Notes: generated by a model not told the origin, from the letters alone. A stretch of 64,000 bases of DNA from Setoptus koraiensis (GCA_048013815.1 CM106586.1:24242001-24306000); one strand, 5' to 3'; shown: positions 20,399 through 50,407, numbered from the stretch's first letter. Translations and numbers: made by a program.

Positions 20399-23300
20399 AT
20401 GATGATTAATTTGAGAGCAAAATTCAAAAGTTATGAAGAAGCACTCAAGTTTATGTATGGTGGTTTACCGCTTGTCTCTATCAAAATATTTATGATCTAC
20501 CTAACTCTCTTGCCGCAAACAATAAATACATCTCAGGATCTGGCCTCAGCAATTACCTCAACATTGTCTTCTCCCCAGACAGTATCTGTTGATGGTTTAG
20601 ATGGCGAGGCAAGAGAATCAATTAAAAATCTATTGTCATCATTATCTTCACCGGAAGTTTTAGCAAACTTGGAACAAAACTTAGAAGAATCTAAATTATT
20701 TCAACAACAACCACAACAAAAGTCTGACGGATTATCTTTAGAGAGCATAATTGGCAATTACCTCTCGAATAACAATGTGGATGTTAACGAACTACTCAAG
20801 AAGCATCAATACAACTTGACAAATGGTTATGATACATTACCGTCGGCCTCAATCGCAAATTTATTTACTACTAAGAACGGAACAAACTTTCTCAGTGACC
20901 TCAACAGCACATTATCATCAAACAAAATTGGAGATTTTCTATTGACGCAATTGAATGGTTCGGGGGGTAAGCCATTAGATGGTTTACTGAATAGAGAGCA
21001 AGCCATCAAAGATACACTAACCAAAGTATTGAGTAAAAGTTTGAGCGAGGTAACTGATCATATGTCATTAGACACATTGACTAAATTGAAAAAGCAACAA
21101 GAGGAGCGAAAGTTGCAAAAAGATGTGCGAGCTAAATTGTTTGTAGATTTGATCGAGACAGCTATAGCAACGCACGATGATGTAAAACACAAAAATACCT
21201 CACCTTCTTCTTCGTTGTCATCAAAATTTTCTACAAGCTCACCCTCTGATGATTCTGGTGTTGAAAACCATGGGTTGGCATCAATTGAAGATGGCTCTCC
21301 ACCTCCAGATCTCAATCCAGTTCCACTCTTGAATTATGATTCATTGAACGAACCAGAAGAAGGAAATTCATCACACGATGAAGACATCACTAGTGGCGAT
21401 GGTGATTCAATAAGTAAACAGCAACAACAATCTAACAAAGATGAAAAGGCGAACAATGAGGACGCAGTCCTGAAGCAACAGATTGAAATACAGAATGACT
21501 CACAAATTAAAAGACAATTTAAAAAGTTCAAAGATCGTTTCGCTACGAGAAAGAGACAATTGGAACAAATCAAAAAGTTATTCAATATAGAAATGATATT
21601 AAATCCTCGAAGCTCAAAATCAAATTCAACCAGTTCAGTATCGAACAATTACAAAACTGATGGTAAATATGAGGCTCACGACTTGATTATCATAGACGGA
21701 GAGACTGGCAAGACGAAAGAAGTATCAACTGGCTCACTCAAGAATAATAGCAAGCAACGAAAAATAGATAGAGAAACTAACAGAAATAGTAAGAAGGATC
21801 TCGCTGTTATCAAGTCTGTTAAGGACTCGCAAGATGATGATGCTTACAAGAGATTTCGAACGAAATTCAACGACTATGAGGATTATCAAAAATACTTAAG
21901 AGAGAATCCCGAGTTTCTCAGCGATGGGCTCTCAGAGGACTTATCGTCCAATGACGAAGAATCCACAAGAAATCTCGATGATATTTCAGATCATCAAGAT
22001 TCAGACGATTCAGACGAAAATTTCACTAATCGTGCCTCTGATAGCTATGCAATGAACAAGTATAGAGGCATGACACAATTATCTGAATTAGAGAGAGAGG
22101 ACTCAATGAACGGTGTCGTTCCTTCCAGTTTGAGAGGTTACAGACAGTTATTGGCAAAAGGTGTTAATTCAGAAAATCTAAATGACGTATTAGATCCCGA
22201 ATCACAGTCAAGGTCCGCGGACATGACCGACAAAAATCGAAGGGCCTTGCTGTGGCAGCTTTATGAAGATGATAATAATAGTATTAGGAAGCTTATTGAT
22301 GAAAGTCATCCGAGCCCAGCATTGGATTCATCTAGTGGAGATAGACATATTACGAGAGCTCAATTGGAGCAAATGATTATTCGGCAATCATTAGCAACTA
22401 ATCATGATAATTCAACCAGTTTGGATTCAGTCTTGAGACAACAATTATTGAATTCAACCAGTGGAAGTAATAGTGTTAGCAACAATAAGCGATCATCATT
22501 GCTTCTCGATGGCCACCAAAACATTGATAAATTTATAGCAACTCTCGTTGATCGTCATGATAAGGGTAAAACAACGAAAAATAAAACATTAATAGAGATA
22601 CTGTCGAACCTTTCTAACAATGAAAGGTCACTTTCTCAACCAAGCTTACTACAACCAATCAATAATCACTTTCACGACATAGATGCTGACCGATCCTATG
22701 TCAATAGGTACGGTTCAGATATCCATCCAAATACAGAACAAAACATTGTTAATAGCCATGTGGTTGGATCGAAAATTCCCAACAACACATATTTGGGCAA
22801 TCACAACATGTACAATACTCACCAAAAAGCGATAATCATGCAATCCAATCAGCCAAATCACCAACGCTATCAACTAATGCAAACTTCACCTCTGACAAGC
22901 GGCTCCCCTAATCCGCAACAACAGCATCAGTATCACAATAAATATCACCATGGAATTAATAGTGGTCCTTACAGTGCCAATAATAGGCAAGATCATGGTC
23001 AGGAATTCTCGTCGTCTTCTGTTAATCAGAATATTTCACCACCAAGCCAAACAAACAAGCCAACAGTTGTGTATGGCAGTAATAATCCGCAACAATCAGC
23101 ACCTACTTTAGATCGATTTCAAGCATGGAGCGATGTGAGCCATACTGAGGCCAGCTCATCGGATAAAAAATTGGGCGTTAGCAACATTAGCGTAGCTAGC
23201 GACACCACAATCAATTATACATCAAACTTATCACCGCCATACGCTATCAACAATAACAATAATCAGGGTAATCGATCAATATCAAATGTTGTCTTCACAT

Positions 23301-24079
23301 CAACTTATCCATTACCAACGGCAATGTCCAACACCATAAACAATAACGCTTTATTGCGTCAGAATCCAACAAACAACAACAACAATAACAACAGCAACAA
23401 TAAGAGATTGCATAATACCTATAGTGCGGGTGCGGGTGCGTTTGATGGTCAATCGGTCAACAATCATCATAACACATTACGCCTACAATCGCCTACGTCT
23501 TTGAGCAAAAATAACCACAACAACAATAACAATAATACAATTTCAAGGTCACCTCTTTCACCAACGATGAATCCATCCACAAAGAATACATCGTTTCTGT
23601 ATCCCAGTGACATTGTTACCTCATTCCCAGGTAAAAATTCTAACAACGACAAAAAGAGAGGAGCAAAATTTGCTCAAAAGCACCCTATATCAAAAAATGA
23701 TTTCCCTCATAACGGCTCCACGAATGATGAAGATTCTTATGGAACTAACAACAATGACGACACTGACAATTCGGACTATGACAACAACGACAATGATGCA
23801 ACGCAAACAGATAATAAGAAGTTTCACAAGCAAGGGGTTGGTAATGATGGATCTATGAAAAAATTCAAGTATTCAGCGTCCAAAATATCAACAAAACATG
23901 TACCGTTTTATGGTGATTCCTTAACGATAATGGGTGGCAGTAGACCTGTGAAGAGTGTGGAACGCGATTACTTTAGTAACTACAAAAAAGTGGATAGAGG
24001 TAAAGTAAGCAAACCGCACTCATTTCACAACAAATCACAAGAACAGTCGACTCAATTACCAAAAACTAAACGCCATTGA
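20399..24079 (+). CDS. Uncharacterised 1226-aa low-complexity (N/S/Q/D-rich) protein, no recognised domain
   Basis: 3.7-kb uninterrupted ORF in AT-rich DNA. The true start is uncertain (ATGs at 20399, 20402 and 20453; possible splice acceptor ttttcag just upstream). Confidence 0.8.
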   Translation: MMINLRAKFKSYEEALKFMYGGLPLVSIKIFMIYLTLLPQTINTSQDLASAITSTLSSPQTVSVDGLDGEARESIKNLLSSLSSPEVLANLEQNLEESKLFQQQPQQKSDGLSLESIIGNYLSNNNVDVNELLKKHQYNLTNGYDTLPSASIANLFTTKNGTNFLSDLNSTLSSNKIGDFLLTQLNGSGGKPLDGLLNREQAIKDTLTKVLSKSLSEVTDHMSLDTLTKLKKQQEERKLQKDVRAKLFVDLIETAIATHDDVKHKNTSPSSSLSSKFSTSSPSDDSGVENHGLASIEDGSPPPDLNPVPLLNYDSLNEPEEGNSSHDEDITSGDGDSISKQQQQSNKDEKANNEDAVLKQQIEIQNDSQIKRQFKKFKDRFATRKRQLEQIKKLFNIEMILNPRSSKSNSTSSVSNNYKTDGKYEAHDLIIIDGETGKTKEVSTGSLKNNSKQRKIDRETNRNSKKDLAVIKSVKDSQDDDAYKRFRTKFNDYEDYQKYLRENPEFLSDGLSEDLSSNDEESTRNLDDISDHQDSDDSDENFTNRASDSYAMNKYRGMTQLSELEREDSMNGVVPSSLRGYRQLLAKGVNSENLNDVLDPESQSRSADMTDKNRRALLWQLYEDDNNSIRKLIDESHPSPALDSSSGDRHITRAQLEQMIIRQSLATNHDNSTSLDSVLRQQLLNSTSGSNSVSNNKRSSLLLDGHQNIDKFIATLVDRHDKGKTTKNKTLIEILSNLSNNERSLSQPSLLQPINNHFHDIDADRSYVNRYGSDIHPNTEQNIVNSHVVGSKIPNNTYLGNHNMYNTHQKAIIMQSNQPNHQRYQLMQTSPLTSGSPNPQQQHQYHNKYHHGINSGPYSANNRQDHGQEFSSSSVNQNISPPSQTNKPTVVYGSNNPQQSAPTLDRFQAWSDVSHTEASSSDKKLGVSNISVASDTTINYTSNLSPPYAINNNNNQGNRSISNVVFTSTYPLPTAMSNTINNNALLRQNPTNNNNNNNSNNKRLHNTYSAGAGAFDGQSVNNHHNTLRLQSPTSLSKNNHNNNNNNTISRSPLSPTMNPSTKNTSFLYPSDIVTSFPGKNSNNDKKRGAKFAQKHPISKNDFPHNGSTNDEDSYGTNNNDDTDNSDYDNNDNDATQTDNKKFHKQGVGNDGSMKKFKYSASKISTKHVPFYGDSLTIMGGSRPVKSVERDYFSNYKKVDRGKVSKPHSFHNKSQEQSTQLPKTKRH

Positions 24080-24745: not shown

Positions 24746-25708
24746 TCATGTAAATAGACTATGATATATCAGGTATAGAAATAAAAAGCATGATGAAGCT
24801 ATGGCCGTATAAAAAAAGATCTTACAATTCTTATTTGATTTTTTTCGTTGACGACGCTTCGCTAACTCGGCTGGGGACAATTTCTTTCTGAGCTTTAATT
24901 TTGATCTTTTTTTCTCGCCATTCTCTTCATCATCTTGGCTGTCGCTGCTCGATCGCATAGGCGTTGTTGCCACTGGTATTGTAGTATCATTGTAGACATT
25001 AGTGTTATGATTGTTATGATAACACACAGTGGTTTTGGTGGGATCATAACTGTCGCTTGTGCCATGAATAATTACACTTGGAATTTCTATTATCTCCGTT
25101 TCTATATGTTCGCCTACTTCATAATGGTTGTTATTGTTATTAATACCATTAGTGTTGTTGTTGCCATCCCTATCAATTAATTTAGTTTCGAATAATTCAT
25201 CACGACCCTTCATTGGACTAATATCATCGGTGTTGATTGCGCAACAATTAAATTGATCCGAAGGCGTGCTAGCAGTGTTTAGGTCATCAATTGACTTCCT
25301 ATTTACATTTGGACTAATACCGACAATTTCCTTTGTAAAATTGTTGATGTGACCATTGCATAACTGAGTTGATTGTTGATCATCATCACTATGTCTCTCT
25401 GTATCTTTTATTGTTAATAGTCTATTATTTAATTGAGCATCTCCATTACTTAATGTTACTTTATCAATTGTGTTATATCCGTTATTTTTGCTATCATTGC
25501 TTGTATAAGAATTATTGCTGGTTTCATCAATCTTGTTATTGTCATAGTCAGATTGCACATCAATAATCATTCGTTCTTTTTCTTTTTCCTTTTCCTCTTG
25601 CAAAATGTTTGATCTACTGATGGATGAGGATATTGGTATGTAATTTTTGATGGCATTCTTAATGTAATGCGCTGAATGGCCATTAGATGTCGACAATGAT
25701 AGAGCCAT
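24746..25708 (-). CDS. Uncharacterised 320-aa protein with basic stretch and C-terminal transmembrane segment (tail-anchored-like)
   Basis: ATG-initiated 963-nt ORF ending KKRSKLKLRKKLSPAELAKRRQRKK...KIFFYTAIASSCFLFLYLIYHSLFT*. Confidence 0.7.
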   Translation of the reverse strand: MALSLSTSNGHSAHYIKNAIKNYIPISSSISRSNILQEEKEKEKERMIIDVQSDYDNNKIDETSNNSYTSNDSKNNGYNTIDKVTLSNGDAQLNNRLLTIKDTERHSDDDQQSTQLCNGHINNFTKEIVGISPNVNRKSIDDLNTASTPSDQFNCCAINTDDISPMKGRDELFETKLIDRDGNNNTNGINNNNNHYEVGEHIETEIIEIPSVIIHGTSDSYDPTKTTVCYHNNHNTNVYNDTTIPVATTPMRSSSDSQDDEENGEKKRSKLKLRKKLSPAELAKRRQRKKSNKNCKIFFYTAIASSCFLFLYLIYHSLFT

Positions 25709-45402: not shown

Positions 45403-46875
45403 ATGGTCAATTCATCTAGCAAACTAAATGGACAAATGGTTGGTACTGTTTCTGCGATTGACCAATTTTCCAGGAACTATATCGAGACATCGACTGAGGC
45501 TCCAATATACAAGAAAGTAGATAATCAAATCAACAATGATTGTGTTACAAAAAAAGGTCGAGTCCATGCTTTTGATACCATCACCTATTGGGTGGGTAAC
45601 TCGAAACAAGCAGCATCCTTTTACATGAGTCATCTTGGATTTGAACCAATTGCCTTCAAGGGCCTGGAAACAGGGTCACGTGATGTGGCTTGTCACGTTT
45701 TAAAATTGAACGATATTGTTATACAATTTGTTTGTGCCGTCCAGCCAAACAACGAAGTCATAAGTGACTTTTTAAAGAAACATGGCGACGCTGTCAAAGA
45801 TGTGGCGTTTCAAGTTGAAAATATCGAGGACATGTTAGAGCACGCTCTCAGTCAAGGTGCCGAATTAGTTCATCCTTTAGAGATACTCCAATATGACGGG
45901 GATAATCAATTAGATCAAAGTGACGACAACTCGAAACAGTCAATACAATTGCAACAATTGAATGCAAATGGACAAGCAACACGAAAGTCACCTAATCGTT
46001 CTATATTGAAAAAGGCGACAATTAAAGCCTTCGGCGACGTTACTCATACCTTCATCGAAAGAAACTATGATTATGGTTATGCAAAGTTTCAACCTGGGTA
46101 CGAGGAGCCCTCGTTCAAGGTGAATTGTTGATAATATTCTACAAAATTAGTTTGGATTGATTCCGATTATCTAAGAATGACATTTTTCAACTGAAATCTT
46201 TTCTAACGTTTCTAAATACAGCTTCCGCCGGCTTTTGAAAAACTACCAAAAATTCAAGTTTTGGAAACAGATCATCTTGTAGGACAATTCATACCCAACA
46301 AACTGGAGGAAATGAATGAATGGTATAGCAAGGTATTGAAATTTAAACGATTCTGGTCGGTGGACGAAAAAACTATTCGTACTGAACACTCTGGTGTCAA
46401 GACCCATGTAATGACCAACGACAATGAGAAGATCAAGATACCTTTATGTGAAGTTATTCTATCGAAGAAAGCCAGATCAAAATCAGAGGAGTTCGTCAGA
46501 TTCAACTATGGCTCAGGTATACATCACATAGCTCTAAAGACAGATGACATTGTTTCGACAGTCGCTAATCTGCGAGAACGTGGTCTAGATTTTTTGCATA
46601 CTCCGGACATTTACTATGTACATCTAAAAGAGCGTTTGAAAGACTGTTCACTGAAAATCAAAGAGGATATTGATCAGTTGCACAAGTTGAAGATTCTCAT
46701 TGATTTTGATGAGCAAGGTTATTTGTTACAGATATTCACGAGGCCAGTCCAAGATAGGCCAACATTTATTTTTGAGTTCATACAACGATCTGAACACGAT
46801 GGTTTTGGAGCGGGAAACTTCCTAGCGTTGTTCAAGGCTATAGAAGCCGAGACGGCATTGAGGGGAAATCTGTGA
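45403..46875 (+). CDS. 4-hydroxyphenylpyruvate dioxygenase-like protein with altered active site; 2 exons 45403-46119, 46222-46875; 456 aa
   Basis: FDTITYWVGNSKQAASFY, HGDAVKDVAF, FGDVTHTFIER, RFWSVD, HIAL, GYLLQIFTRPVQDRPT and GFGAGNF...LRGNL are HPPD hallmarks. Phase-0 GT-AG intron of 102 nt. Confidence 0.93.
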
Positions 46876-49277: not shown

Positions 49278-50267
49278 TCATTGAAACGAATGTTCAGAAG
49301 CCGGAAAGGTTCCTTCTTGAACCTCCCTATAAAACTCTTTCGAGGCATTCAGTAGTTGATCACCAAGGTTACAGTAACGTTTCACAAATTTTGGCTTGAA
49401 GACCTTCAATTTGTTACTTGAGTTTGCTGATGGCGGTATAAAGCCGGCCATATCTTGCCAGACCAAAATTTGGGCATCACAGTGGGGCCCGGCTCCAATG
49501 CCCACAGTGGGTATCTCCAGTTTTTCGGTAATCATCCTTGCTAAATCACTCGGAACCATTTCTAGGACACATGCAAAGGCACCTGCGTCTTGTAATCTCA
49601 GGGCGTCTTCGATTAAGTTGTTGGCACTCACAGAATCACGACCTTGTACTTTGAAACCACTCAACAAGTTTTCGTGTTGGGGTGTGAAACCTATGTGGGC
49701 CATCACTGGTATCCCTGAACAAGTCAACAATTTCACATGGTCATAATATTGTGAACCTCCCTCTAGTTTTACAGCCTCGGCACCTGCCTCCTTCATTAGG
49801 CGAACAGCACTTTTTAAAGCCTGTTTGGGACTACATTGATAAGTACCGAACGGTAAATCCGCTACTAACAGGGCTCGCTCCACTCCTCTGGACACTGATT
49901 TTGTGAACAAGATCATATCATCCAAAGTTATCGGGATAGTAGAAGAGCATCCCATATGAACATTGGCTGCAGAGTCGCCAACCAATAAACAAGGTAGTTT
50001 GGCTGTGTCAAATATGCGAGCCGTCATCACATCATAAGTGGTCAACATGGCCCAACGCTCTTTCCGTATCTTCAACATCTTTAAATCAGATATACGGATT
50101 TTGATTTTGTTGTGCAAACTACCTGTTGTACAAGCTACTGAAACTTCATGACATCCCGGATTAGATTGATCAGACGATTGACCCAGTACAGGATACGGGT
50201 GGGTCTCTTCACTAAGTTGGGGTATTTGATTCGGGTCTGTTTTGTCAGGAATGTTAGTGGTTGACAT
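49278..50267 (-). CDS. panB: 3-methyl-2-oxobutanoate hydroxymethyltransferase (ketopantoate hydroxymethyltransferase), bacterial type, intronless; likely start ATG 50267 (ORF open to 50321)
   Basis: WAMLTTYD, LLVGDSAANV, ADLPFGTY, AVKLEGG, PVMAHIGFTPQ, GFKVQGR, LEMVP, IPTVGIGAGPHCDAQILVWQDMAG and PKFVKRY...FPASEHSF cover all PanB motifs, including the Mg-binding Asp residues and the catalytic Glu. Confidence 0.97.
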   Translation of the reverse strand: MSTTNIPDKTDPNQIPQLSEETHPYPVLGQSSDQSNPGCHEVSVACTTGSLHNKIKIRISDLKMLKIRKERWAMLTTYDVMTARIFDTAKLPCLLVGDSAANVHMGCSSTIPITLDDMILFTKSVSRGVERALLVADLPFGTYQCSPKQALKSAVRLMKEAGAEAVKLEGGSQYYDHVKLLTCSGIPVMAHIGFTPQHENLLSGFKVQGRDSVSANNLIEDALRLQDAGAFACVLEMVPSDLARMITEKLEIPTVGIGAGPHCDAQILVWQDMAGFIPPSANSSNKLKVFKPKFVKRYCNLGDQLLNASKEFYREVQEGTFPASEHSFQ

Positions 50268-50407
50268 GATTCTCCGAGAAAATGAATGAGAAATTAAATA
50301 ATATTCTTTTGATTCATACAAGAATTGAAAATAATGTTAAAAAGGTTAACGTGTAGTCTAAATGATGTTGAGTTGAGATAATCACAATGGGAAATTGTAA
50401 AAATTTT

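What the first reader, a model, noticed from the sequence alone, without database searches (positions are those of the whole stretch)
45403..46875. HPD-like dioxygenase with intact Fe triad but a rewired substrate pocket, suggesting a new reaction
Seen in sequence, aligned by eye to human HPD as recalled: the metal ligands are kept (D-H in TDHLVG = H183, H in HIAL = H266, E in FEFIQR = E349), as are LLQIF (Q334) and GFGAGNF. Four normally conserved pocket residues differ: S226->T (SSLRS -> SGVKT), N241->C (PINEP -> PLCEV), Q251->K (SQIQE -> SKSEE) and Q265->H (GVQH -> GIHH); VGNQP also becomes VGQFI. There is a ~35-aa insertion in the N-terminal domain. Established knowledge: these Ser/Asn/Gln residues position 4-hydroxyphenylpyruvate and steer the product; Asn241 variants give non-homogentisate products, and hydroxymandelate synthase and HPDL differ in this pocket. 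Inference: a neofunctionalised 2-oxoacid dioxygenase, possibly acting on another substrate or insensitive to triketone HPPD inhibitors.
Basis: partly seen in the sequence, partly recalled or inferred. Interest (0 to 1): 0.75.

Follow-up and report, generated by a model that had tools for sequence, protein, structure and literature searches.

The report
Mite HPD enzyme with rebuilt pocket
Eriophyoid (gall and rust) mites carry a well-conserved version of the tyrosine-breakdown enzyme HPD that keeps its iron centre but has replaced three otherwise invariant pocket residues, so it probably makes a different product or uses a different substrate.

Summary

**Gene.** It has two exons, 45403-46119 and 46222-46875, separated by a 102-nt GT..AG intron, and encodes 456 aa. 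It has the HPD fold and is 46-49% identical to animal HPPD structures.

**Kept.** The Fe triad (H183, H266, E349 in human numbering) and Q334, F336, F359, N363 and F364.

**Changed.** N187Q, Q188F, N241C, Q251K and Q265H, plus I227H, P243V, I252A/S, F347V/I and Q375T.

**Conservation.**
- About 269 other eukaryotic HPDs are 98-100% invariant at these positions.
- 31 relatives of the window protein all carry the substituted residues.
- S226T is confined to the window and its sister species.

**Origin.**
- The only named relative is from the eriophyoid mite Fragariocoptes setiger.
- Gene order and the intron position are shared across the clade.
- The clade nests among acariform mite HPDs on a very long stem.
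- dN/dS against a sister species is 0.05.

**Published mutagenesis.** Loss of these residues cuts HPPD efficiency 100- to 3700-fold or uncouples the reaction.

**Verdict.** This is a selected, lineage-wide remodelling of the distal pocket and a new variant of a known enzyme kind. It is probably no longer a normal homogentisate-forming HPPD.

**Untested.** Its substrate and product, its expression, and whether a canonical HPD also exists in the genome.

The parts
45403..46119 (+). Exon 1 (239 codons). It holds a disordered N-terminal extension (aa 1-48), the N-terminal VOC domain and a variable insert.
   Evidence: An ORF from ATG 45403 with GT at 46120. Residues 49-157 align to rat and human HPPD 11-119 with E=1e-31. 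TIGR01263 matches positions 2-100.
45403..45546 (+). N-terminal extension of about 48 aa. It is Ser/Thr/Asn/Gln-rich and absent from canonical HPDs.
   Evidence: It does not align to HPPD structures. Its length and sequence vary across the clade. pLDDT is below 50 in the equivalent part of the P0245 model. dN/dS is 0.29.
45874..46005 (+). Variable insert (aa 158-201), about 33 aa longer than in rat HPPD, in a loop of the N-terminal domain.
   Evidence: One search shows the gap between the two aligned stretches. One search shows the insert length differs in every clade member. Local pLDDT is 57-66 in the P0245 model. dN/dS is 0.19.
46120..46221 (+). Intron, 102 nt, GTGAAT...TACAG, containing in-frame stop codons.
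   Evidence: The intron is at the same position in F. setiger and in canonical HPD genes of Brevipalpus and Oppia. The sister species has a 93-nt intron there. The spliced junction matches intronless orthologues.
46222..46875 (+). Exon 2 (217 codons plus stop): the C-terminal catalytic VOC domain with the Fe site and the substrate pocket.
   Evidence: phmmer against human HPPD residues 167-381 gives E=8e-71. TIGR01263 matches positions 149-353 at 253.8 bits.
46273..46275 (+). Fe ligand His (human H183). The next codons, 46285-46290, encode Q-F in place of N187-Q188.
46402..46407 (+). T-H in place of S226-I227. Thr occurs only in this lineage, while His227 is clade-wide.
46447..46449 (+). Cys in place of N241, the hawkinsinuria position and part of the H-bond network.
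   Evidence: 31 of 31 clade sequences have Cys, and 265 of 269 others have Asn.
46480..46482 (+). Lys in place of Q251, which binds the substrate 4-OH and acts as the gate residue.
   Evidence: the clade has 30 Lys and 1 Arg, and 267 of 268 others have Gln.
46522..46527 (+). His-His: His in place of Q265, followed by the Fe ligand His (human H266).
   Evidence: 31 of 31 clade sequences have His at 265, and 269 of 269 others have Gln.
46774..46776 (+). Fe ligand Glu (human E349).

Best explanation
This is the eriophyoid-mite derivative of the acariform HPD gene.

**Retained chemistry (inferred from kept residues).** The protein is still a two-domain, Fe(II)-dependent 2-oxoacid dioxygenase. It keeps everything needed for the first half-reaction:
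- bidentate binding of an arylpyruvate to Fe through the 2-His-1-Glu triad;
- Q334 and N363;
- the Phe sandwich F336/F364, plus F359;
- O2 activation and oxidative decarboxylation to an Fe(IV)=O-arylacetate complex.

**What was rebuilt.** The far end of the pocket has changed. In HPPD this end holds the 4-hydroxyl, fixes the ring orientation and gates the site. The S226-N241-Q265-Q251 hydrogen-bond network is replaced by Ser/Thr-Cys-His-Lys. Co-changes occur at N187Q, Q188F, L224V, I227H, P243V, I252A/S, F347V/I and Q375T.

**Most likely consequence (inference).** The ring, or a different para-substituted or larger arylpyruvate, sits differently. The second half-reaction then no longer gives homogentisate efficiently. 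It would instead give another product, such as a mandelate-type, arylacetate or quinol/oxepinone-type compound.

**Shown here:** gene structure, descent, conservation, selection, and which residues changed.

**Inferred:** that catalysis persists and that the product and/or substrate differs.
For: - **Fold and family.** Pfam Glyoxalase matches twice, and TIGR01263 scores 357-369 bits in full-length clade members against a cut-off of 277. The AF2 model of clade member P0245 has pTM 0.80 and matches human HPPD 3ISQ at TM 0.93 with 46% identity.
- **Kept residues.** The Fe triad, Q334, F336, F359, N363 and F364 are present in 31 of 31 clade sequences.
- **Switched residues.** N187Q, Q188F, I227H, N241C, P243V, Q251K and Q265H are about 100% in the clade. 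The ancestral residue is 98-100% in about 269 other HPDs.
- **Concentration of change.** 23 of 163 conserved columns are switched, and 18 of them lie in residues 183-266 (p = 9e-8).
- **Purifying selection.** dN/dS is 0.054 overall and 0.026 in the C-domain against sister-species contig L005.
- **Phylogeny.** The clade is monophyletic (100/100) on a stem of 1.3-1.8 substitutions per site with short internal branches. Once other long branches are removed, it sits inside acariform HPDs with 89/96 support.
- **Vertical descent.** The inter-domain intron is shared with canonical mite HPD genes. The order CRAL_TRIO, HPD-like, XAP5 is conserved in the window, F. setiger and four other contigs.
- **Literature.** Q251 and Q265 H-bond the 4-OH of HPP (PMC3739788, PMC12020224). 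Q251E and Q265E cut HPP turnover about 10-fold (PMC12020224). The AtHPPD mutants S267A, N282A, Q307A and Q293A lower efficiency 12-, 160-, 99- and 3722-fold (PMC6750108). Human N241S is uncoupled and releases oxepinone (PMC13260116).
Against: - There is no biochemical assay.
- There is no RNA evidence. All runs laid were contigs and showed no spliced joint.
- A co-evolved Cys-His-Lys network could in principle restore homogentisate formation.
- If this is the mite's only HPD and the downstream tyrosine-catabolic genes are present, ordinary function becomes more likely. I could not search the rest of the genome.
- The pocket geometry was inferred from alignment to solved structures, not from coordinates of this protein.
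- The C-domain-only model of the window protein was mediocre (pLDDT 69.6).
Confidence: 0.55

Rival explanations
1. It is still an ordinary HPPD. On this view it is the eriophyoid orthologue, and possibly the only HPD, and it still makes homogentisate for tyrosine catabolism. The Cys-His-Lys cluster would be a compensated replacement of the Asn-Gln-Gln network, fixed during the fast evolution of this lineage.
For: - It scores above the TIGR01263 equivalog cut-off.
- Its tree position is where an eriophyoid orthologue would fall.
- The inter-domain intron is shared with canonical mite HPD genes.
- No canonical HPD from F. setiger appeared among the 120 best hits, while five other mites' canonical HPDs did. 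This is weak, because the list is truncated.
- His and Lys can still donate H-bonds to a phenol.
Against: - The three replaced residues are 98.5-100% invariant across about 269 HPDs.
- Single substitutions at these positions cost 10- to 3700-fold or uncouple the reaction (PMC6750108, PMC12020224, PMC13260116).
- The changes are focused on the pocket rather than spread across the protein.
- The gene lies at a different genomic position from the DEAD-box helicase-HPD pair conserved in four other acariform mites.
Confidence: 0.25
2. It is an animal hydroxymandelate synthase in the sense of HPDL/HMS. On this view it belongs to the HPDL or HMS family and supplies 4-hydroxymandelate for the coenzyme Q headgroup.
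For: - Position 241 is no longer Asn, as in HMS. ScHms has Val223 at this position and Ile247 at the position equivalent to 265. That correspondence comes from my numbering arithmetic on PMC3720870.
- S226, which holds the 4-OH in the HMS product complex (PMC13260116), is kept.
Against: - As family membership this fails. The clade nests within arthropod and acariform HPDs.
- It is 46-49% identical to animal HPPD structures but only 24-26% to HMS structures.
- HPDL is only about 35% similar to HPPD (PMC13111500).
- F336, whose change to Ile/Val gives HMS activity in S. avermitilis HPPD (PMC13260116), is kept.
- No conserved mitochondrial presequence is present. The N-terminal extension is variable and disordered.
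- An HMS-like product by convergence remains possible and is covered by the best explanation.
Confidence: 0.05
3. It is a decaying or non-catalytic copy: either a pseudogene in the making, or a protein that has lost enzymatic function and serves as a binding or regulatory protein.
For: - Key catalytic residues are lost.
- The N-terminal extension and the insert are long and disordered.
- No transcript evidence was found.
Against: - The reading frame is intact in the window, in F. setiger and in more than 30 other sequences.
- dN/dS is 0.054.
- The Fe triad and the 2-oxoacid-binding residues are invariant, which would be unnecessary in a non-enzyme.
- The substituted residues are themselves invariant.
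Confidence: 0.05
4. It is contamination or a horizontally acquired gene, not a mite gene by descent.
For: - A bacterial-type panB lies 2.4 kb away.
- Most relatives come from unnamed metagenome or Logan contigs.
Against: - It has a spliceosomal intron at the same position as in mite HPD genes.
- It is flanked by animal genes (CRAL_TRIO, XAP5) in conserved order in six contigs, including an NCBI mite assembly.
- It nests within arachnid HPDs.
Confidence: 0.01

Closest known systems
Animal 4-hydroxyphenylpyruvate dioxygenase (HPD/HPPD, EC 1.13.11.27; human 3ISQ/5EC3, rat 1SQI, Aedes aegypti 8XTV)
   Same: - Two-domain VOC fold.
- 46-49% identity.
- Fe triad H183/H266/E349.
- Q334, F336, F359, N363 and F364 are kept.
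- The inter-domain intron is shared with mite HPD genes.
- It passes the TIGR01263 cut-off.
   Different: - The S226-N241-Q265-Q251 network is replaced by S/T-C-H-K.
- Further clade-wide switches are N187Q, Q188F, L224V, I227H, P243V, I252A/S, F347V/I, N365L and Q375T.
- It has a disordered N-terminal extension and a variable insert.
- It lies at a different genomic location from the canonical HPD of other acariform mites.
Hawkinsinuria variant N241S of human HPPD
   Same: It loses Asn241, the residue that H-bonds S226 and Q265. In the human enzyme this re-orients the ring and uncouples the reaction, giving oxepinone or quinolacetic acid (PMC13260116).
   Different: Here the change is to Cys. 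It is accompanied by Q251K, Q265H and others, and it is fixed and selected in a whole lineage rather than being a disease allele.
Hydroxymandelate synthase (bacterial HMS, 2R5V/3ZGJ) and mammalian HPDL
   Same: These are HPPD relatives that keep the first half-reaction but direct the Fe(IV)=O to a different position. They have non-Asn, non-Gln residues at the positions equivalent to 241 and 265. That correspondence is inferred from the ScHms numbering in PMC3720870.
   Different: - Identity is only 24-26%.
- The mite clade arose independently inside arthropod HPDs.
- It uses polar, ionisable Cys/His/Lys rather than hydrophobic Ile/Val.
- It keeps F336.
KAG9511075.1, annotated '4-hydroxyphenylpyruvate dioxygenase' in Fragariocoptes setiger (Eriophyoidea: Phytoptidae)
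   Same: - It is a member of the same clade with the same switched residues.
- It has the same intron position and the same neighbours, CRAL_TRIO and XAP5.
   Different: It has a longer N-terminal extension (503 aa). Its annotation is automatic and does not note the altered pocket.

Membership tests
HPPD (TIGR01263 4HPPD equivalog; EC 1.13.11.27) | Two tandem VOC (glyoxalase-fold) domains with an overall HPPD fold | tested here: met
   Pfam Glyoxalase matches both exons. The model of clade member P0245 matches human HPPD 3ISQ at TMt 0.93.
HPPD (TIGR01263 4HPPD equivalog; EC 1.13.11.27) | Profile score above the curated cut-off of 277 bits | tested here: met
   Full-length clade members score 357-369 bits, against 436-453 for canonical HPDs. 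The window's exons, scored separately, give 86 and 253.8 bits. The spliced window protein could not be submitted as one reference.
HPPD (TIGR01263 4HPPD equivalog; EC 1.13.11.27) | 2-His-1-Glu Fe(II) facial triad (H183, H266, E349) | tested here: met
   alignment. The triad is invariant in 31 of 31 clade sequences.
HPPD (TIGR01263 4HPPD equivalog; EC 1.13.11.27) | Residues that bind the 2-oxoacid and the ring (Q334, N363, F336, F364, F359) | tested here: met
   All are invariant in the clade.
HPPD (TIGR01263 4HPPD equivalog; EC 1.13.11.27) | Catalytic H-bond network S226-N241-Q265-Q251 that holds the 4-OH and orients the ring for hydroxylation and side-chain migration | tested here: not met
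   N241C, Q251K and Q265H occur in 31 of 31 clade sequences, with one Arg at 251. Other HPDs are 98.5-100% N/Q/Q. The residue roles come from PMC6750108, PMC13260116 and PMC3739788.
HPPD (TIGR01263 4HPPD equivalog; EC 1.13.11.27) | Converts HPP to homogentisate | not testable with these tools
   This needs a recombinant enzyme assay.
HMS / HPDL (4-hydroxymandelate-forming relatives) | Closer in sequence and phylogeny to HMS or HPDL than to HPD | tested here: not met
   Identity is 24-26% to HMS structures against 46-49% to animal HPPD. The clade nests within acariform HPDs. HPDL sequences themselves were not in my data set.
HMS / HPDL (4-hydroxymandelate-forming relatives) | HMS-type pocket: hydrophobic residues at positions 241 and 265, and Ile/Val at F336 | tested here: inconclusive
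   Positions 241 and 265 are changed, but to Cys and His rather than Ile or Val. F336 is kept. The HMS residue identities were taken from PMC3720870 by numbering arithmetic and from memory, not from an alignment made here.
HMS / HPDL (4-hydroxymandelate-forming relatives) | Forms 4-hydroxymandelate from HPP | not testable with these tools
   This needs an assay.

The most novel reading that the evidence does not exclude
Eriophyoid mites may have converted their HPD, possibly their only one, into a new arylpyruvate oxygenase after abandoning tyrosine catabolism during genome streamlining.

Its Cys-His-Lys distal pocket would select a substrate or product with a role specific to these plant-manipulating mites. 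Two candidates:
- oxidative decarboxylation of phenyl-, 4-hydroxyphenyl- or indole-pyruvate to auxin-active arylacetates, which is YUCCA-like chemistry on a different scaffold;
- an independent, HPDL-like route to the coenzyme Q headgroup.
Probability: 0.12. Interest if true: 0.85.

Novelty: new variant of a known kind. Interest (0 to 1): 0.62.

Why it matters
HPPD is a major herbicide and drug target. Its Asn-Gln-Gln pocket network is regarded as universal and essential.

A whole superfamily of crop-pest mites has replaced that network with Cys-His-Lys and then kept it under strong selection. This is a natural experiment on how the scaffold can be re-aimed, as it was independently in HMS and HPDL.

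It matters in three practical ways:
- It flags a mis-annotation risk. The protein passes the HPPD equivalog threshold and is already named HPPD in GenBank.
- It makes testable predictions about tyrosine metabolism in the smallest arthropod genomes.
- It could reveal a new reaction, or a mite-specific target distinct from the plant host's HPPD.

Tried and rejected
1. **RNA and splicing evidence.** The look-up of sequencing runs found no holder on record as RNA, and read laying gave only contigs with no joints. Expression is therefore unproven. The intron is supported by homology only.
2. **Positional orthology.** Canonical HPD follows a DEAD-box helicase in Brevipalpus, Halotydeus, Oppia and an unnamed mite. 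No such helicase lies within the 64-kb window, so the orthologue-or-paralogue question stays open.
3. **Second, canonical HPD in this genome.** This cannot be searched with the tools. Earlier-findings word searches were blank, which means nothing.
4. **First tree.** It joined the clade with two other long branches, Plectus and P0042, which is a long-branch artefact. I rebuilt it without them.
5. **HPDL/HMS membership.** Rejected on identity and phylogeny.
6. **Pseudogene, contamination or HGT.** Rejected on the intact reading frames, dN/dS, the intron and the synteny.
7. **ESM Atlas feature search.** It returned only generic HPPD clusters.
8. **Raspail et al. 2011 (PMC3138293).** The paper is not held. 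Its results are cited only as quoted by PMC3739788.
9. **C-domain-only AF2 model of the window protein.** It was mediocre (pLDDT 69.6), and no coordinates are available, so no docking or distance analysis was done.
10. **My first exon-1 end (46128).** It was wrong by three codons (VNC belongs to the intron). Searches used that slightly long reference, which does not affect their results.
11. **Full-representative HMMER search.** Not run. The operators flagged it as costly, and it would not have resolved the paralogue question because it gives no names or genomic context.

Full report
**What is there**

The interval holds a two-exon, plus-strand gene.
- Exon 1 is 45403-46119 (239 codons).
- The intron is 46120-46221 (102 nt, GTGAAT...TACAG, with in-frame stops).
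- Exon 2 is 46222-46875 (217 codons plus stop).
- The product is 456 aa.

The spliced junction ...EEPSFK|LPPAFEKLP... matches, without a gap, full-length relatives that are uninterrupted ORFs (P0241-P0249, P0027). One of these lies on a 17-kb genomic contig (L008). The sister-species contig L005 and Fragariocoptes setiger have an intron at the same place.

I found no RNA evidence. No run holding the stretch is on record as RNA, and the contigs laid showed no spliced joint.

**Checking the observation**

Exon 2 aligns to human HPPD 5EC3 residues 167-381 with E=8e-71. That alignment confirms:
- the Fe ligands H183, H266 and E349, the Q334/F336 motif LLQIFT, and GFGAGNF;
- the substitutions N187Q, Q188F, S226T, N241C, Q251K and Q265H.

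Exon 1 aligns to rat and human HPPD residues 11-119 and 131-166. This leaves an N-terminal extension of about 48 aa and an insert of about 33 aa.

Pfam finds Glyoxalase-fold domains in both exons. TIGR01263 (4HPPD) matches both halves.

**Is it more than a one-off?**

Word searches with each exon found about 40 exon-1 ORFs at 46-88% identity and about 20 exon-2 ORFs at 60-97% identity. They come from Logan, JGI and ENA assemblies and are well separated from canonical HPDs at about 40-55%. A search with a full-length member found nine more full-length proteins.

I aligned all 343 sequences.

| Position (human numbering) | 31 clade sequences | About 269 other eukaryotic HPDs |
|---|---|---|
| 187 | Q | N 99% |
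| 188 | F | Q 98% |
| 227 | H | I/V 96% |
| 241 | C | N 98.5% |
| 243 | V | P 100% |
| 251 | K (one R) | Q 99.6% |
| 265 | H | Q 100% |

The Fe triad, Q334, F336, F359, N363 and F364 are invariant in both groups. S226 is Ser in 29 of 31 clade sequences. Thr occurs only in the window and its sister species.

Of 163 columns that are at least 90% conserved in other HPDs, 23 are switched in the clade. Eighteen of the 23 lie within residues 183-266 (18 of 46 there against 5 of 117 elsewhere; Fisher p = 9e-8). Further switched sites, F347V/I and Q375T, lie at the pocket entrance next to Q251 (PMC3739788).

A few other odd HPD homologues exist. They are unrelated small groups:
- Plectus sambesii has S226A and N241C.
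- The P0042 cluster has N241A and Q251P.
- P0060 and P0063 have N241V.

**Whose gene is it, and where did it come from?**

The only named clade member is KAG9511075.1 of Fragariocoptes setiger, an eriophyoid mite of the family Phytoptidae. An earlier follow-up in this scan also called this genome a mite.

The gene order CRAL_TRIO gene, HPD-like gene, XAP5/FAM50 gene (minus strand) is shared by the window, F. setiger and the sister-species contig L005. L005 also has the neighbouring panB. In three further contigs the order is the same, with BCAS2 and KDM6 inserted before XAP5.

The tree gives these results:
- The clade is monophyletic at 100/100 support.
- Its stem is 1.3-1.8 substitutions per site, against 0.02-0.44 inside the clade.
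- With three other long-branch sequences removed, it sits inside the acariform mite HPDs (Halotydeus, Brevipalpus plus Panonychus, Oppia plus Medioppia) at 89/96 support, within arachnids and arthropods.

The inter-domain intron is shared with the canonical HPD genes of Brevipalpus and Oppia. Their second intron is absent here.

The gene therefore descends vertically from the acariform HPD gene. It is not HPDL, HMS, a retrogene or a transferred gene.

It is not at the ancestral position, however. In four non-eriophyoid acariform mites the canonical HPD directly follows a DEAD-box helicase gene, and no such gene lies in this window. I could not determine whether eriophyoids also keep a canonical copy.

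**Is it functional?**

Against the sister species (92% amino-acid identity, dS 0.74), Nei-Gojobori dN/dS values are as follows.

| Region | dN/dS |
|---|---|
| Whole protein | 0.054 |
| N-terminal core | 0.011 |
| Catalytic domain | 0.026 |
| Insert | 0.19 |
| N-terminal extension | 0.29 |

An AF2 model of the closest full-length relative, P0245 (72% identical to the window protein over the kept alignment columns), has pTM 0.80. Its core pLDDT is above 90, its first 75 or so residues are disordered, and its insert has low confidence. It matches human HPPD 3ISQ at TM 0.93 and 46% identity, Aedes HPPD at 49%, and HMS structures at only 24-26%.

Full-length clade members score 357-369 bits on TIGR01263 (cut-off 277; canonical HPDs score 436-453). 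This explains why GenBank calls the F. setiger protein HPPD.

**How it most likely works**

Published work assigns the following roles:
- Q251 and Q265 hydrogen-bond the 4-hydroxyl of HPP in the closed state (PMC3739788, PMC12020224).
- N241 bridges S226 and Q265 (PMC13260116).
- In AtHPPD the equivalent network, S267-N282-Q307-Q293, forms on substrate binding. Its Ala mutants lose 12-, 160-, 99- and 3722-fold in efficiency (PMC6750108).
- Q251E and Q265E in the rat enzyme cut HPP turnover about 10-fold (PMC12020224).
- Human N241S consumes O2 efficiently but is uncoupled, releasing oxepinone instead of homogentisate, with the ring re-oriented toward S226 as in the HMS product complex (PMC13260116).

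In S. coelicolor HMS the residues near the para substituent include Val223 (PMC3720870). By numbering arithmetic, Val223 and Ile247 are the equivalents of N241 and Q265. That correspondence is my inference, not a formal alignment.

Everything needed for oxidative decarboxylation is therefore kept, while the part that positions the ring for C1 hydroxylation and the side-chain shift is replaced by a conserved Ser/Thr-Cys-His-Lys cluster with co-adapted neighbours.

| Reading | My estimate |
|---|---|
| Active arylpyruvate dioxygenase whose product and/or preferred substrate differs from canonical HPPD | about 0.55 |
| Compensated, still homogentisate-forming HPPD | about 0.25 |
| Non-enzyme or decaying copy | about 0.05 |
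| HPDL/HMS family member | about 0.05 |
| Contaminant or transferred gene | about 0.01 |

The Fe triad and the Phe residues F336, F359 and F364 are kept.

**Novelty**

Two full-text searches, one for HPPD with Eriophoidea and one for HPPD with mite and paralog, found nothing describing this.

It is a new, lineage-wide variant of a known enzyme family, not a new family. A direct consequence is that eriophyoid proteins annotated as HPPD should not be assumed to make homogentisate.

Noticed in passing
window 49278-50321 (-): A single-ORF ketopantoate hydroxymethyltransferase (panB; Pfam Pantoate_transf, E=2e-101) sits among animal genes. The same gene lies next to XAP5 in the sister-species contig L005, so it is stably integrated.
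   Followed up: partly
L002 7489-12513; L003 7641-11198; L004 7647-11311; the P0199 contig (no DNA held): In four non-eriophoid acariform mites the canonical HPD gene lies directly downstream of a DEAD-box helicase gene on the same strand, a conserved gene pair. In eriophoid-type contigs the HPD-like gene follows a CRAL_TRIO gene instead.
   Followed up: partly
proteins P0042 (and its cluster), P0060/P0063, P0227: Other small, unrelated groups of eukaryotic HPD homologues also have altered pocket residues. A JGI metagenome cluster has Q188L, S226T, N241A and Q251P. An ENA/Logan pair has N187C, S226T, I227T and N241V. Plectus sambesii HPD has S226A and N241C. They may be further independent re-aimings of the scaffold.
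   Followed up: no
window 46120-46221; L001; L002-L004; L008 5530-6948: Intron history: the inter-domain intron of acariform HPD genes is retained here. The second intron, after HIALxTxDII, is missing in the eriophoid gene. Some clade members have lost the remaining intron too, which fits the known intron loss in eriophoid genomes.
   Followed up: partly
window 20399-24079 (+) and 24746-25708 (-): Two long ORFs, of 1226 aa and 320 aa, have no Pfam match at E<=1e-4.
   Followed up: no
window 46679-46712, run X7 record 9 and run X2 records 3-5: The same public runs hold other HPD-family contigs. One is a second clade-type sequence at about 82% identity on a 28-kb contig in X2. The other reads GGYLLQLFTK in X7, which I recall as typical of fungal HPPDs. 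These runs therefore contain several organisms.
   Followed up: no
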